Under the pieces are notes generated by a model that ran no database searches, was not told the origin of the DNA, and saw nothing but the letters and a program-made list of their open reading frames with translations. 64,000 bases of DNA from Mytilus edulis (Eukaryota), in assembly GCF_963676685.1 (NCBI RefSeq), contig NC_092346.1, positions 74,710,001 to 74,774,000 of the forward strand, written 5' to 3'. This document shows, piece after piece, positions 23,773 to 29,814 of the stretch. The first letter of the stretch is position 1; every line of letters begins with the position of its first letter. A program made the position numbers and the translations under genes.

Positions 23773-25131
23773 ACACACTTAGACAGACTTATATTCAGAA
23801 TAGTTTGGTGGTGTATGTATAAAATCTAACAAACTGAAATTGACTAAATACATTGCATTTTTCAATTTTGGACTGAATAAAGTCACATAACTTTGTAGTA
23901 TCAAAAGATAAGGAGCCCAGTTTTCATTTGATTGGTACTAATCATGTATACCTATTTGTTACTTTTGTTCAGCCATCCTTGTATCATCAGGTATTTTTGA
24001 TGATTGACCATTTCACAGTGGTATTTCACCTTTGAAGTCTCTTGTAAAGTACAGTAGGAGTCCTATGATCCACACTTGATTGACTTTTCTGTGTCTAGAT
24101 TCATTTTTCATGAATCAGCAGTTATGGTTCCGGTGATATAAAACACCAAAACTTTCAGTTTTTGTCAAGATTGCAACATTTTGATGTGAAACCAGTATAC
24201 AGTGTGTTAGTGACTATGTTGTCAACATTAAGATTTAGTCTATACGTTGTTAAGTATTTAGTCGAGCATCCACCAGCTAGAACATTCAGACTAAGATACA
24301 TGAACCTTTCTCAATAAAAAATCACCAATCTGGTTGAATGATGTACATCTGTCTATTTTTAAACACAGTATGTAAACCGTGAGATATTTTTTGGTTATTT
24401 GTGTCATTTCATTTTTTTTCAATTGAAAATGTATGTAGGATATATTGGAATGAATTGGTGAATTATCTTTAAAAAAAATAGGCTGATGTACATTATTAAG
24501 CCAGATTTTGGTTTAATTTTGGGGATAAGAAAAGATTTCAAATGCTCTTAAATTTCATATTTGATTTTGGTTTTTAAAACAGTGATTCAGTTGCCACTGT
24601 TGAGTCTTATAAAGAAGAAACACACGCCTGATACTAACTTATAAGCCTGGTAACTTTGAAAGGTTTGTACATACGATAAGTCCATCTCTAAATTGTCTAA
24701 AGTCTAGAAAAGTTGTGAAACAGAACTGTCAAAGAATTGCCATCAAAGCCAAATCCATAGAAAAAACCAACGAAAAACGTTAATATATGACATAAAAAGA
24801 CCATTTATAAAGATCTTGACTGGACAGTAACATTAGTATGTGGGCGGATAATCTATAAGTTTTTTTTTAAGATCCCACCCCTTGTATGATCTTGTATACT
24901 TATACTCTGAATTACTGTTAAGATATAGTCAACATTATTCTATCTGTAGTTTATCTGGTTGCTCAGTTTTGGATTTTTGAACTTTTTTTTTACATTTACT
25001 AGGGAACAAGACATCATCCGCAAACCTAATATTTGAATAAAATACTTAAAAGGTGCAGCTTAAATGTGTTTTAGTTAATCATCTAACCTGGTCATTTATG
25101 CAATATAAGCCAAATATTGCCAGAAAGATTA

Positions 25132-28100
25132 ATGATAAATGAGCTTAGAAATGGAAAATTACTAAATACTAAACTTGTTCAAAGGGTATCCACACGTCTC
25201 AATCTTCAAAATCGGTTATCTAAAAATACTACCATCGCTAACATTTTTAACAATAAAAATCGTGGTTACCCTTCTATCGATAAGTGTCATGCCAAAAAAT
25301 GACTTACATGTCCCCGTCTTTCCACCAACAATACGGTAAGGTCCACGTTTAATGGTCGCACATTTTCCTTAAATTTTGAAACTGATATAACTTGAAAAAC
25401 AAACAGTATTATTTATTTACTCACATGAAACAAACCGGGATGTGGTATTCAGTACGTAGGAGAAACTGGACGATATTTATCTAAACGCACTCAAGAACAT
25501 CTGTATCGTTTTAAAAGACCCAATAAATTCAAAAGTATCATTTACCAACACCTTAAGAAGCACAACCATCCTTTTAAATATTTAGCAGTTCAACCTTTAG
25601 AAGTAGTAAATAAGCAGCCTGGTGAATCGCTTTCAAAGTTTGTACGATCACGGAAAATAATTGAATTAAATTGGATTAAAAAATTACAGACAGTTTACCC
25701 TCTCGGTCTAAATGATAATATCATGGGAATTGGTAATATATCTAGAACCAATTCCGTTAACATTTTGGATATAGTTTCTAAAACTGTTCGTAAAAAACGT
25801 TCTCACGGTCGTAGAACAAATCGCAATCAAAGAAAATTTCGGGCCAATCATACCAATATTTCGGACCTAATTTCCATTTCAAAAAACAACGGCAGACATT
25901 ATCTGTTAACAAAACTCTGTTCGTTACAGGTTAACAGGTTAAATACAATTTTGGAGGATTGCAACACAATTTCATATAGCAGTCCTAAGTATGAAATTGT
26001 TCAAATTATTATGGCATATTGTTATTCTAAATTATTTCCCAAATTTGATCGCCCTAAAGATCATAAAAAACATTTTATTAAAATTAAGTATGTCAATAAA
26101 GGCTTTGATTTTGTAAATATTGCCGGTATATTTAACGACCATTCTGTTAAAGAACAAATTCCTGGATATTTTGACAATACTGAGCTACCTCTTATTTGTT
26201 ATATTTACAAGAAATCTACCCGGAAATTTGTGTTTAATTATAGTCAAATGTGTAAAGATGTTAATATCAGTGAAAATACACCTACTTCATGTAATTGCAG
26301 TAATTCCGAATATATATATTTATGGACCCATTTCCCATGTTATAACAGGAGATCTTAACATCGTTCAAGACCGAGAGTTAAAATCATTCCTCAGTAAAGG
26401 ACCTAAATATCGTCCCCCGTCAATTATTAATTGGAATGAGTGTCGTAATATCATCAACGACTCACTCCATACTTACTGTATGAAATGGATAAAACGGGAA
26501 AAAGCTGACAAAAAATCTTTGGACTCTTTTTTTAATTCAGTAATGAAGATAGTTGATATACGTATTCAACATTTTAAAGAACATTTTACTATAAACAATA
26601 ACCACAATAAACCTATTTCTCGTATCAAACATAAACTAAAAGAACTAGCCAAGGAATTTGTTTTTGTCCCGGCAGATAAAGCTGCTAATAATATTATTAT
26701 TGTTTGACGTAAATTTTACATTGAGGTTCTGAAAAAGGAAATCACCAATTCACCAACATTCCAACTGACTCCATTTTCAGAAAACGAAATCTGTAACAAA
26801 CATAAACTTTTAGCCACCGCTTTACAAGCAGAGCCAAATACAATGAAAGTCCCAACTATGTATTGGCTTCCGAAGCTACACAAAACCCCTTACAAATATA
26901 GATTTATTTCGTCTTCAAGCCATTGTTCAACTACTAAATTGTCTATTCTTCTTACCAGCACACTTGGTACAATTAAAAACCTGATAATAAATTGTTCAAA
27001 TAAGGCCTTCGAAAATAGTGGAATAAATTACTTTTGGAGTGTCAAGAACTCGTTGGAAGTACTTGATAAATTGCATGCTTATATTGGTGATTTTGAATCT
27101 GTTCAAAGTTTTGATTTTTCTACCCTGTATACCACATTGCCTCACATTCTCATTAAGAAAAAATTCACACACCTAATTAAATGGGCATTCAAAAAATCAG
27201 AATGTGAATATATATGTTCAAACTCTTTTAGGTCATTTTTTAGTAGCAATAAACAAAAAAAACTATGTTAATTGGACATGCTTTGATACTATATATGCCC
27301 TTGAATTTTTACTAGATAACATTTTTGTTCGCTTTTGGGATTCCGTATTTCGTCAGATTATCGGAATTCCAATGGGGACTAACTGTGCACCACTTATTGC
27401 GGACCTGTTTTTGTATTGTTATGAGTTACAATTTATGACAAAAATAAGCAAAGACCCATCGAAACAACATCTGATAAACAAATTTAATAATACTTTTAGA
27501 TATTTGGATGATATTTTGGCTCTCAATAATGACGACTTCAGTATGTATATTAATGAAATTTATCCTGTTGAACTTACTTTAAATAAAGCTAATACTAACA
27601 ATGACCACTGCCCTTTTCTCGATCTTGATATCTATATCACTTATGGAAAGCTGAATACTAAAATTTATGATAAAAGGGATGATTTTTCATTTCCTATCGT
27701 TAATTATCCGTTTTTAGATGGTGACGTTCCCTTGTCACCATCTTACGGTGTTTATATATCTCAACTTGTACGATTTGCTCGTGTATGTAACAATGTTTTA
27801 GATTTTAACGAGAGAAATTTATGTATTACTGAAAAATTATTACACCAGGGTTTTCGATATCACAAACTAGTCAAAACATTTACTAAATTTTATCATCGGC
27901 ATAAAGACATCATTCGTAAATATAGCTCAACATGCAGACTTCTAATACGTTCAGGTATTTCACATCCAATTTTTTATGGTAATATTCTTTATAAAGCACA
28001 AAGGTGTCAGTATTCACCTCAGAAACTTACAAAACCTTTGAATAGACTTATTAAGAAGGGATATAATTACGATACTGTTGTCAAGTCATTAAAGATTGCA

Positions 28101-28151
28101 TATTTTGGCGTTAATATTGAGTCACTGATAAGGTCTTTGCATCGGAACTAA
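25132..28151 (+). CDS. Naiad EN-RT polyprotein (about 1000 aa) with 4 in-frame TGA (putative Sec) and 2 frameshifts in this copy
   Basis: ATG 25132; TGA at 25300, 25393, 25426 and 26705; frameshifts in a (TA)n run near 26311-26320 and an A8 run near 27255-27262; true stop TAA 28149-28151. Joins track ORFs 25117, 25723, 26120, 26843 and 27204 into one protein. Confidence 0.85.
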
Positions 28152-28200
28152 ACACATTATTTTTTTAAAAACAGTTGTTGGCATGACACGGGTTATGTTC

Positions 28201-28274
28201 TTCTCATATATGTTATGATGGTATGATACTAAACCCCTAACGGGAAGGATTGTGCCTGATGTTCATATGATGAA
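28201..28274 (+). promoter_or_regulatory. SECIS element (eukaryotic type II) in the Naiad 3' UTR
   Basis: Helix I TCATAT (28204-09) / ATATGA (28265-70); core A-TGAT (28215-19) / TGAT (28257-60); helix II GGTATGATACT / AGGATTGTGCC (10 of 11 pairs including GU); unpaired AAA 28231-33, 11 nt above the quartet; apical mini-stem CCC-CTAAC-GGG. Confidence 0.88.
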
Positions 28275-29814
28275 ATCATAATCTTTCAGTCAGTTTAATT
28301 GAAGTCTGGAGCTGGCATGTCAGTTAACTGCTAGTAGTCTGTTGTTATTTATGTATTTTTGTCATTTTGTTTATTTTCTTTGGTTACATCTTCTGACATC
28401 AGACTCGGATTTCTCTTGAACTGAATTTTAATGTGCGTATTGTTATGCGTTTACTTTACTACATTGGTTAGAGGTATAGGGGGAGGGTTGAGATCTCACA
28501 AACATGTTTAACCCCGCCGCATTTTTGCGCCTGTCCCAAGTCAGGAGCCTCTGGCCTTTGTTAGTCTTGTATTATTTTAATTTTAGTTTCTTGTGTACAA
28601 TTTGGAAATCAGTATGGCGTTCATTATCACTGGACTAGTATATATTTGTTTAGGGGCCAGCTGAAGGACGCCTCCGGGTGCGGGAATTTCTCGCTACATT
28701 GAAGACCTGTTGGTGACCCTCTGCTGTTGTTTTTTATTTGGTCGGGTTGTTGTCTCTTTGACACATTCCCCATTTCCATTCTCAATTTTATGAAAGATAC
28801 CAAAATAATATTCAAATTCATATGTCGAAAACAACTCGCAAATTCATTGCAAAAGACGAAAACAACGTTACGACAACTGTACAGCATAGAAAACTAAAGA
28901 ATGAGCAACACCAAACCCATCAGAAAATGATGTCAAAGGCTACAGAGAAAAGCCTCATGGTAAATGAAAATCCATCCATATAAAATTGATCGTTTAAATT
29001 TTATTTGCTTAATGTACTGCAATTTCAAGCACATCTTTTATGATTCAATGAAATACTAGCAGCTTCAAAAAGTATAATGGACAATATCGATTTTGAAATC
29101 CAAGTTTTGCCGAAATGGTATAATACATTTACATATCGATGAGTGGATTAGGCTCTTAAGAATTATCAGATCTCGAAATACATGTTTTCCCAAAATAAAT
29201 CTATTACCCTACTTTTTAGAAACAAAACGGTTTACTATTCAAGTCCCATAAAGGATATTATTGAGCTGTTTATAACAGCTAAAGAATGCATCAGAACCAA
29301 ATGTTCACTTATGATATAGATAAGGCGATGTGGTTAACAAACGCAACAGTAGTATACCGCTGTTCAAAAGTCATAAATGCATTGAGAAAAAAACAGCATG
29401 GTTACAAACTAAAACCAAGGTAAACACGTTAACTATCAGAGGAAAACAATGGAACAACAGAAACACTGAAGTGCCACAAAAACGAACGCTAACATACATA
29501 GAAACAAACTATTTGATAACAACTGCCACAGGACATTTAAGAAAAAAAGAATGGTTGGTTGAACCTTGTTTTTTTCGGAAGCCAAACCTCCCACTCATTA
29601 TTACCCGGTTTGTTTATTCCTGGCTTGTTTTGGTTTTTTGTTCATATTAGTTTTTGATTACCTTCAACTATTGTGTCGTTTTTGACTGGTGCTTATTAAC
29701 ATACATTAAATACTAGTATCCAATTTTAGTTTAGTTAAATAATTTGCAAATTGTATTCTGTAACATTTTTAAATGGACTAAAGCTTGTGAAGCACGTTTC
29801 AAACAGGACAAGCT

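What the first reader, a model, noticed from the sequence alone, without database searches (positions are those of the whole stretch)
25132..28274. Selenoprotein-encoding retrotransposon: Naiad PLE with four Cys-aligned in-frame UGA codons and its own SECIS
Seen: reading on from the 61-aa ORF, the frame stays open through a full GIY-YIG domain except for TGA at 25300 (KCHAKK*LTC), 25393 (DIT*KTNSIIY) and 25426 (YLLT*NKPGC). A fourth TGA at 26705 (DKAANNIIIV*RKFY) lies at the RT start. No TAA or TAG interrupts the reconstructed ORF of about 1000 codons despite AT-rich DNA, and a well-formed SECIS follows the real stop. Knowledge: these positions are cysteines in PLE Zn-finger, CxxC and DKG-region motifs; Naiads with an N-terminal GIY-YIG, some encoding multi-Sec selenoproteins in spiders and clams, were reported by Craig et al. 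2021 (recalled). Inference: this element recruits the host Sec machinery, so its translation may depend on selenium supply. If the host is a mussel this may extend the known range. Standard pipelines would call it a pseudogene.
Basis: partly seen in the sequence, partly recalled or inferred. Interest (0 to 1): 0.95.

Follow-up and report, generated by a model that had tools for sequence, protein, structure and literature searches.

The report
Dead copy of selenocysteine-coding mussel retrotransposon
This is a broken, 5'-truncated copy of a young and abundant blue-mussel "Naiad" retrotransposon whose unbroken copies need four UGA codons read as selenocysteine, helped by their own SECIS hairpin; elements of this kind were described in clams and spiders in 2021, so it adds mussels and shows a larger clade, not a new principle.

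Summary
TGAs lie at 25300, 25393, 25426 and 26705, a TAA stop at 28149, and a SECIS at 28205-28269. The window copy is dead, though.

The TGAs are not private decay. They are fixed in sister copies (17/17, 18/18, 18/18, 29/30), and some copies keep a 1002-codon frame whose only internal stops are these four.

All four TGAs sit on four of only nine columns that are Cys in at least 90% of 45 Cys-type Naiads. A second family in the same genome (64% identical, synonymous sites saturated, pN/pS 0.30) shares them and adds a fifth at the CxC motif.

Marine-metagenome relatives form one clade with mosaic Sec/Cys states. Their SECIS lies just 3' of the stop and shows strong covariation.

The host has five tRNA-Sec genes, and an in-silico Me15/Me16 PCR gives the Mytilus edulis product size.

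Sec decoding is inferred, not shown. The kind is already published (Craig et al. 2021), so this is a new member in a new host group. This scan already reached the same reading on other copies in this genome.

The parts
25139..28791 (+). 5'-truncated, frameshifted copy of Sec-Naiad family A. It holds the ORF remnant and the 3' UTR, but has no 5' UTR and no upstream partial copy.
   Evidence: BLAST against 29 other genomic copies gives these limits, at 95-99% identity. Full-length copies have about 320 bp more at the 5' end.
25139..25143 (+). Remnant of the family's start codon. The window reads ATGA-G where other copies read ATGAAG, so the ATG is out of frame here.
   Evidence: Comparison of 5' ends. 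A 1-base insertion relative to the window appears in 9 copies.
25285..25720 (+). N-terminal GIY-YIG endonuclease region. It holds the CX4UxxC motif (codons 50-58), the GIY...YIG core and the CCHH cysteines.
   Evidence: Alignment with 45 full-length Naiad-type proteins. Pfam GIY-YIG passes its cut-off in those relatives at the matching place.
25300..25302 (+). TGA 1 (codon 55), at the second Cys of CX2-5CxxC.
   Evidence: 17/17 copies TGA; 35/35 Cys in Cys-type relatives.
25393..25395 (+). TGA 2 (codon 86), at the Cys just before the GIY motif.
   Evidence: 18/18; 41/41 Cys.
25426..25428 (+). TGA 3 (codon 97), at the first Cys of the CCHH finger between GIY and YIG.
   Evidence: 18/18; 41/41 Cys.
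26290..26298 (+). CxC linker motif (TGT AAT TGC). Its first Cys is TGA in family B and in many relatives.
26310..26320 (+). TA run with 4 extra bases, giving a frameshift that is nearly private to this copy.
   Evidence: 26 of 29 copies lack the 4 bases. RNA reads lack them in 9/9, 29/40 and 20/20 reads.
26705..26707 (+). TGA 4 (codon 522), at the Cys 8 residues after the DKA motif at the start of the RT.
   Evidence: 29/30 TGA, one TGG; 45/45 Cys.
26670..28148 (+). Reverse transcriptase part of the ORF, split here by the A-run frameshift.
   Evidence: 3234 homologues at E<=1e-5. RVT_1 gives weak hits in full-length relatives.
27255..27264 (+). A run with one extra A, giving a second internal frameshift.
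   Evidence: 15 of 29 copies have one A fewer, which is in frame. So do 75-85% of RNA reads.
28149..28151 (+). True stop codon, TAA.
   Evidence: 29/29 copies TAA.
28205..28269 (+). SECIS element. It has the AUGA core, an apical AAA, a 3' GA, a 10-bp helix II and a 3-bp mini-stem, and begins 53 nt after the stop.
   Evidence: Rfam SECIS_1 at 32.3 bits, model R1 at 67.3 bits, covariation across 23 distinct sequences.
28152..28791 (+). 3' UTR of the element.
   Evidence: Copy limits. RNA depth rises steeply towards its end.

Best explanation
Window 25139-28791 is an inactive insertion of a Naiad-type Penelope-like retrotransposon, here called family A, in a Mytilus genome. The family is young (copies about 97-99% alike) and abundant.

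Unbroken copies carry one ORF of 1002 codons. It encodes an N-terminal GIY-YIG endonuclease, a CxC linker and a reverse transcriptase. Four conserved, probably metal-binding, cysteines are replaced by UGA.

The transcript's 3' UTR carries a SECIS hairpin. By the standard eukaryotic pathway (SBP2, eEFSec, tRNA-Sec) this would recode the four UGAs as selenocysteine, so the full-length protein is made only through the host's Sec machinery.

Shown here: the anatomy, fixation of the TGAs, their match to invariant Cys columns, purifying selection across and downstream of the TGAs, a conserved and co-varying SECIS, and host tRNA-Sec genes.

Inferred: that Sec rather than another residue is inserted, and that expression therefore tracks selenium supply.

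The window copy itself cannot make the protein. It lacks the 5' UTR and an in-frame start, and it has two internal frameshifts.
For: 1. The TGAs are fixed in 17/17, 18/18, 18/18 and 29/30 sister copies. Three of 17 full-length copies read through all 1002 codons with only these four stops. About a quarter of 74 further scored copies keep the exact 905-codon frame from TGA3 to the stop.
2. Only nine alignment columns are at least 90% Cys in 45 Cys-type Naiad representatives. The four TGAs occupy four of them; chance is about 3e-9.
3. Family B in the same genome is 64% identical in protein and has TGA at the same four sites, plus a fifth on another of the nine columns. Between A and B, pS is 0.77 (saturated) and pN is 0.23, and this holds in every segment between and after the TGAs.
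4. Within family A, private substitutions have N/S 2.99 and include 30 new stops. Substitutions shared by three or more copies have N/S 0.68 and no new stops (Fisher p 1.5e-7).
5. SECIS hits were found in A, B and 28 metagenome relatives, all on the coding strand and just 3' of the stop. None was found in the all-Cys outgroup. 91% of helix cells are paired against 63% in shuffles and 37-52% when slid, and 12 of 13 pairs show changes on both sides.
6. The relatives form one clade (100/100 support) with TGA at the DKA+8 site in 28 of 30 rows. States at five Cys sites are a mosaic of U or C only.
7. The host has five tRNA-Sec genes above the Rfam cut-off.
8. The sites match those published for Sec-Naiads.
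Against: - There is no protein-level or ribosome-level evidence. Sec insertion is inferred from sequence alone.
- The window's SECIS scores 32.3 bits, under Rfam's gathering score of 35. Its minimum free energy is not unusual (z -1.05).
- Four Sec codons served by a single SECIS up to 2.9 kb away would need processive recoding, which is rare.
- RNA reads cover both strands with a strong 3' bias. They therefore show presence in RNA, not dedicated sense transcription or translation.
- Some TGA-bearing relatives (L062-L064, L085, L086) gave no SECIS hit with my model, although they have 3' sequence.
Confidence: 0.85

Rival explanations
1. The UGAs are read through without selenocysteine, by near-cognate tRNAs inserting Cys, Trp or Arg or by some other recoding. 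The 3' hairpin would then serve another role, such as RT recognition of the template's 3' end.
For: No protein evidence exists. PLE reverse transcriptases are thought to recognise their own 3' ends, which could also conserve a hairpin. The window's SECIS is just under Rfam's gathering score.
Against: The hairpin keeps exactly the SECIS signature: AUGA, apical AAA and 3' GA are invariant while the helix co-varies. One relative passes Rfam's gathering score at 38.8 bits. The hairpin is absent from all-Cys relatives. The TGAs occur only at Cys columns, as expected for Cys/Sec exchange. The host has five tRNA-Sec genes.
Confidence: 0.08
2. Families A and B are non-autonomous. The TGAs are real stops, the ORF is dead, and the copies are mobilised in trans by Cys-type Naiads.
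For: The genome holds tens of thousands of Naiad-like candidates (54,859 at first look), so trans-acting proteins could exist. Most individual copies, this one included, are broken.
Against: There is strong purifying selection downstream of every TGA: pN/pS is 0.30 with saturated pS, and shared substitutions have N/S 0.68 against 2.99 for private ones. No TAA or TAG occurs in 1002 codons of 32% GC DNA. The TGAs are held at the same Cys columns across families whose synonymous sites are saturated. The closest Cys-at-DKA+8 relative (the P0003 family) was not found in this genome.
Confidence: 0.04
3. The four TGAs are private decay of this one copy, or sequencing or assembly errors.
For: This copy does carry private defects: a 4-bp insertion, 5' truncation and a missing base at the start.
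Against: The TGAs are present in essentially all other copies. They are also present in metagenome contigs from independent samples and in runs from 13 studies under 4 organism labels. None of the 40 best-supported RNA-read differences shown falls on a TGA codon; 183 further differences were not displayed.
Confidence: 0.01

Closest known systems
Naiad_Mmer and Naiad_Scon, the selenoprotein-encoding Naiads of the clams Mercenaria mercenaria and Sinonovacula constricta (Craig et al. 2021, PMC8557442)
   Same: They share the architecture: an N-terminal GIY-YIG, a CxC linker, DKA and the RT. UGA sits at the Cys before GIY-YIG, at the first Cys of CCHH and at the Cys 8 residues after DKA. A SECIS lies shortly after the true stop. 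The hosts are bivalves.
   Different: The host here is a mussel (Pteriomorphia). The clam families have 3 UGAs at Cys sites. Family A adds a fourth at the second Cys of CX2-5CxxC, and family B adds a fifth at the CxC motif.
Naiad_Sdum and Naiad_Smim, the selenoprotein-encoding Naiads of Stegodyphus spiders (Craig et al. 2021)
   Same: They are multi-Sec Naiads with a SECIS. Naiad_Sdum also has UGA at the second Cys of CX2-5CxxC.
   Different: The spider families use the first Cys of CX2-5CxxC and not the CCHH Cys. The paper considers them an independent origin. They are arthropod hosts, and the paper says chelicerate Naiads lack the IFD.
Ordinary Cys-type Naiads, including those reported from mussels and oysters (Craig et al. 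2021)
   Same: Same domain order and the same nine conserved cysteines, the same pLTR and 5'-truncation habits, and high copy number in bivalves.
   Different: They have Cys codons at all sites, and no SECIS was found in the all-Cys relatives sampled. The paper notes a 5-residue insert in the CX2-5CxxC motif of mussel Naiads, which family A (CX4UxxC) lacks.
Selenoprotein P (SELENOP), the classic multi-Sec protein, very Sec-rich in bivalves (Baclaocos et al. 2019, as cited in PMC8557442)
   Same: Several UGAs in one ORF are decoded processively from 3' UTR SECIS elements. Its bivalve hosts have high Sec capacity.
   Different: SELENOP is a host selenium-transport protein that uses two SECIS elements. 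Here there is one SECIS, and the Sec residues replace structural or metal-binding Cys of an endonuclease and RT. The two are not homologous.

Membership tests
Naiad clade of Penelope-like elements (Craig et al. 2021) | A single ORF with an N-terminal GIY-YIG endonuclease followed by a C-terminal reverse transcriptase | tested here: met
   The family A translation (X at each TGA) aligns end to end with 45 full-length relatives of 850-1279 aa. Those relatives have Pfam GIY-YIG over its cut-off near residues 86-216 and weak RVT_1 near 640-845. Pfam found nothing on the TGA-bounded pieces themselves.
Naiad clade of Penelope-like elements (Craig et al. 2021) | A CX2-5CxxC zinc-finger-like motif upstream of GIY-YIG | tested here: met
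   C50-x4-U55-xx-C58. These columns are 34/35, 35/35 and 34/36 Cys in relatives.
Naiad clade of Penelope-like elements (Craig et al. 2021) | A CCHH motif with its two Cys between GIY and YIG | tested here: met
   U97 and C102 lie between IIY and YVG, and both columns are 41/41 Cys in relatives. The two His residues were not checked separately.
Naiad clade of Penelope-like elements (Craig et al. 2021) | A CxC linker motif, and DKA in place of DKG | tested here: met
   C385-N-C387 at window 26290-26298, and PADKAANN at 26672-26695.
Naiad clade of Penelope-like elements (Craig et al. 2021) | Pseudo-LTRs (partial tandem upstream copy) and frequent 5' truncation | tested here: met
   Several full-length copies have an upstream partial copy that ends at the element's 3' end and is followed by the 5' UTR. 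One such locus shows two SECIS hits. 13 of 30 sampled copies are 5'-truncated. The window copy is truncated and has no pLTR.
Naiad clade of Penelope-like elements (Craig et al. 2021) | No canonical hammerhead ribozyme | tested here: met
   No hammerhead family appears among Rfam matches up to E 10 over 24500-29500.
Naiad clade of Penelope-like elements (Craig et al. 2021) | An IFD insertion between RT motifs 3(A) and 4(B), and a (TA)n target preference | not tested
   Not examined. Flanks seen in RNA-read loose ends are AT-rich, but no target-site analysis was done.
Selenoprotein-encoding Naiads | In-frame UGAs at conserved Cys positions, fixed in the family | tested here: met
Selenoprotein-encoding Naiads | A SECIS in the 3' UTR after the true stop | tested here: met
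   Located at 28205-28269, 53 nt after the TAA. It is conserved and co-varies across 23 distinct sequences. The Rfam score for this copy is 32.3, under the gathering score of 35; a relative scores 38.8.
Selenoprotein-encoding Naiads | The coding sequence downstream of the UGAs is under purifying selection | tested here: met
   pN/pS is 0.25-0.39 in every segment, with pS saturated. Shared substitutions have N/S 0.68 against 2.99 for private ones.
Selenoprotein-encoding Naiads | The host has Sec-decoding machinery | tested here: met
   Five tRNA-Sec matches at 77-79.6 bits, over the cut-off of 47. SBP2, eEFSec and the other factors were not searched.
Selenoprotein-encoding Naiads | Selenocysteine is actually incorporated at the UGAs | not testable with these tools
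   This needs proteomics, 75Se labelling, ribosome profiling or a reporter assay.

The most novel reading that the evidence does not exclude
Sec-Naiads are not four isolated curiosities. They form a large monophyletic clade, abundant in marine samples, with two recently active lineages in the blue mussel. Within the clade, five of the nine conserved cysteines have switched repeatedly between Cys and Sec, giving patterns from one to five Sec, including a CxC-motif Sec not reported before and Sec-to-Cys reversals. The elements have also scattered at least hundreds, probably thousands, of working-type SECIS hairpins across all 14 chromosomes, which is raw material for new host selenoproteins.
Probability: 0.65. 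Interest if true: 0.7.

Novelty: new member of a known kind. Interest (0 to 1): 0.55.

Why it matters
Selenoprotein-encoding transposons are known from only four families in four species (Craig et al. 2021). Four points would matter if the reading holds.

1. A mussel family with thousands of near-identical copies, some with unbroken frames, would be the most tractable system so far for testing whether a mobile element really depends on the host's Sec machinery.
2. The mosaic of Sec and Cys at the same five metal-binding cysteines across relatives is a natural experiment on Cys/Sec exchange.
3. Every insertion, 5'-truncated ones included, delivers a SECIS. That makes the idea that TEs seed new selenoproteins directly testable in this genome.
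4. On the practical side, standard TE and gene pipelines will annotate these elements as pseudogenes or as split ORFs. The protein databases already hold them cut exactly at the Sec sites.

Tried and rejected
I used the metagenome scan instead.
No further genomic copies could be cut out, and no genome-wide census was possible.
- Pfam on the TGA-bounded pieces found nothing relevant. The domains were established through full-length Cys-type relatives instead.
- The protein atlas gave no useful taxonomy.
- The paper's supplementary files are not held. The clam and spider Sec-Naiad sequences could therefore not be placed in my tree, and the shared-versus-independent origin question for those published families stays open.
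The two primers were searched separately instead.
- Thermodynamic folding alone does not single out the window's SECIS (z -1.05). Covariation does.
- RNA reads cover both strands and are dominated by the 3' end, so I do not count them as evidence of element-driven expression or of translation.
- Model R1 found no SECIS in some TGA-bearing relatives (L062-L064, L085, L086). I did not pursue this with filters off.
Copies were only compared and counted.
Full report
**1. What is in the window**

It also confirms a TAA stop at 28149.

Rfam finds a full-length SECIS_1 match at 28205-28269 on the + strand. It scores 32.3 bits with E 0.0014, against a gathering score of 35.

The coding sequence in this copy is not one frame. 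It runs in frame 1 up to about 26320, in frame 2 up to about 27262, then in frame 0.

**2. Limits and state of this copy**

A DNA search of the window's own genome (1.37 Gb) gave 3,493 first-look candidates. All 40 scored ones were 95-100% identical.

BLAST of the window against 29 fetched copies places the element at 25139-28791. Compared with them, the window copy has these defects:
- 4 extra bases in a TA run at about 26310-26320, absent from 26 of 29 copies.
- One extra A at 27255-27264, absent from 15 of 29 copies.
- One base missing just after the family's start codon: ATGA-GCTT here against ATGAAGCTT in the others.
- No 5' UTR. Full-length copies carry about 320 bp there, and several of them have a partial upstream copy (pseudo-LTR) in front of it.

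This insertion is therefore dead.

**3. The TGAs belong to the family**

TGA is present in 17/17, 18/18, 18/18 and 29/30 copies at the four sites; the one exception is a private TGG. The stop is TAA in 29/29.

Three of 17 full-length copies read 1002 codons with only these four internal stops. About a quarter of 74 further scored copies keep the exact 905-codon frame from the third TGA to the stop.

In an unbroken copy (32% GC), frame 0 has four TGAs and the final TAA. The other five frames have 49-130 stops each.

**4. The TGAs sit on invariant cysteines**

A full HMMER search with the piece between TGA3 and TGA4 found 2,789 relatives, among them many full-length proteins of 850-1279 aa. I aligned 45 of these with families A and B, writing X at each TGA.

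Only nine columns in that alignment are at least 90% Cys. Family A's TGAs fall on four of them: codons 55, 86, 97 and 522. The chance of that is about 3e-9.

In the terms of Craig et al. 2021, the four sites are:
- codon 55: the second Cys of CX2-5CxxC;
- codon 86: the Cys before GIY-YIG;
- codon 97: the first Cys of CCHH;
- codon 522: the Cys 8 residues after DKA.

The full-length relatives carry Pfam GIY-YIG at the N-terminus and weak RVT_1 hits at the C-terminus. That is the Naiad domain order.

**5. A second family and selection**

The same genome holds a second family, B (loci). It is 64% identical to A in protein. It has TGA at the same four sites, plus a fifth at the first Cys of the CxC motif, which is another of the nine conserved-Cys columns.

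Between A and B, synonymous differences are saturated (pS 0.77) while pN is 0.23. The same pattern holds in each segment before, between and after the TGAs.

Within family A, substitutions private to one copy have N/S 2.99 and include 30 new stops. Substitutions shared by three or more copies, which arose in replicating lineages, have N/S 0.68 and no new stops (Fisher p 1.5e-7).

So the whole ORF, including everything downstream of each TGA, has been under selection for protein function. That is incompatible with the TGAs acting as terminators.

**6. SECIS**

Family B has its own SECIS_1 match (28.4 bits) about 135 nt after its stop. The rest of the A and B 3' UTRs barely aligns.

A scan of metagenome contigs returned 66 related loci. 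Rfam found SECIS_1 in several of them, one above the gathering score at 38.8 bits.

I built a covariance model from nine of these hairpins. It found 30 matches among 68 sources.
- All 30 are on the coding strand.
- Wherever the frame is intact, the hit begins within a few to about 140 nt after the stop.
- There were no matches in the all-Cys outgroup loci.
- The 64-kb window holds only the one match.

On the 23 distinct sequences, 91% of helix cells are paired, against 63% in shuffles and 37-52% when the partners are slid. Twelve of 13 pairs show changes on both sides. In the nine-sequence seed alignment, UGA of the AUGA core, the apical AAA and the 3' GAU are invariant.

**7. A clade with mosaic Sec/Cys states**

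In the metagenome loci, the codons at A positions 55, 86, 97, 385 and 522 are almost always TGA or a Cys codon. The other four conserved cysteines stay Cys almost throughout.

The patterns, written in the order 55-86-97-385-522, run from CCCCU through CCUCU, CUUCU, CUUUU and UUUCU (family A) to UUUUU (family B and others).

An RT tree (IQ-TREE) puts A, B and 28 other rows in one clade with 100/100 support.
- Position 522 is TGA in 28 of the 30 rows.
- The two exceptions are nested inside the clade. They still carry TGA at the CxC site and keep a SECIS hit, strong in one (57.5 bits) and weak in the other (19.9 bits, E 0.15). One of them (L053, the P0003 family) is the sister of family A.
- The all-Cys outgroup sits on very long branches, so the root and the direction of change are not secure.

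The hosts of the metagenome contigs are unknown.

**8. Host**

The genome has five tRNA-Sec genes above Rfam's cut-off.

The Mytilus species-diagnostic primers Me15 and Me16 each match once, perfectly and facing each other, on contig C4. They span 180 bp. PMC4057270 gives 180 bp as the M. edulis product and 126 bp as the M. galloprovincialis product. It matches the genome exactly but differs by one A from the sequence printed in that paper.

Near-identical sequence occurs in runs from 13 studies under four coded organism labels, six of them RNA libraries.

**9. RNA**

Three transcriptome runs of organism A cover the element on both strands. Depth is 10-60x over the ORF and rises to about 1,400x at the 3' end. 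It is zero in the 5' flank.

Most reads lack the window's 4-bp and 1-bp insertions. None of the 40 best-supported differences shown falls on a TGA codon, but 183 further differences were not shown.

This shows that the family is present in RNA. It does not show translation.

**10. Comparison with what is known, and novelty**

Craig et al. 2021 described Sec-Naiads in two clams and two spiders, with three or four UGAs and a SECIS just after the stop. They used mussel Naiads in their comparisons but reported no Sec type there. Full-text searches found no later report of one.

Family A is therefore a new member of a published kind, in a new host group and with a new combination of sites. The five-Sec family B, the CxC-site Sec and the mosaic clade go beyond the paper, but they lie outside this window.

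Earlier follow-ups in this scan reached the same reading on other copies of this genome. My tests agree with them.

Noticed in passing
window 28380-28791: RNA-read depth climbs about 50-fold over the last 400 nt of the 3' UTR, from roughly 20-60x on the ORF to roughly 1,400x. Many reads have loose ends at 28737-28741. This suggests the 3' tail is shared with far more numerous truncated copies or with other families or short non-autonomous elements.
   Followed up: no
window 27255-27264 and sister copies: The A-run length is polymorphic. About half of the sampled genomic copies have the frameshifting extra A, yet 75-85% of RNA reads have the in-frame length. Either transcription is biased to in-frame copies or the 29-copy genomic sample is unrepresentative.
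   Followed up: partly
own genome, contig C7 74.82-75.37 Mb and C1 49.15 Mb: There are five tRNA-Sec genes above the Rfam cut-off. Four of them score identically and lie within about 560 kb on C7.
   Followed up: no
own genome, contig C10 14.40-14.44 Mb (also C945): A tandem array with a period of about 895 bp and more than 40 units. Each unit holds an 81-nt tRNA-like sequence that scores 45.9 bits against the tRNA-Sec model, just under its cut-off of 47. Its identity was not examined.
   Followed up: no
own genome, all 14 large contigs: All 150 scored matches to the SECIS model score 60.9-72.2 bits, and the rough first-look candidate count was 302,640. TE-borne SECIS hairpins are therefore scattered genome-wide.
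   Followed up: partly
L053-L108 (marine metagenome contigs): Dozens of diverged Naiad families from marine metagenomes carry one to five TGAs at the same Cys columns. Public protein databases hold their ORFs cut exactly at those sites, for example proteins ending in ...DKAANNxxxV.
   Followed up: yes
L073, L066, L103 and others: In some relatives a further TGA lies within a few codons of the SECIS or of the ORF end, and probably acts as the real stop there. Craig et al. suggested the same for Naiad_Mmer.
   Followed up: no
L043:440-585: A long inverted repeat upstream of a 5'-truncated family B copy gives a weak miRNA-precursor match (MIR7723, 36.7 bits against a gathering score of 200). It is probably an unrelated MITE-like hairpin.
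   Followed up: no
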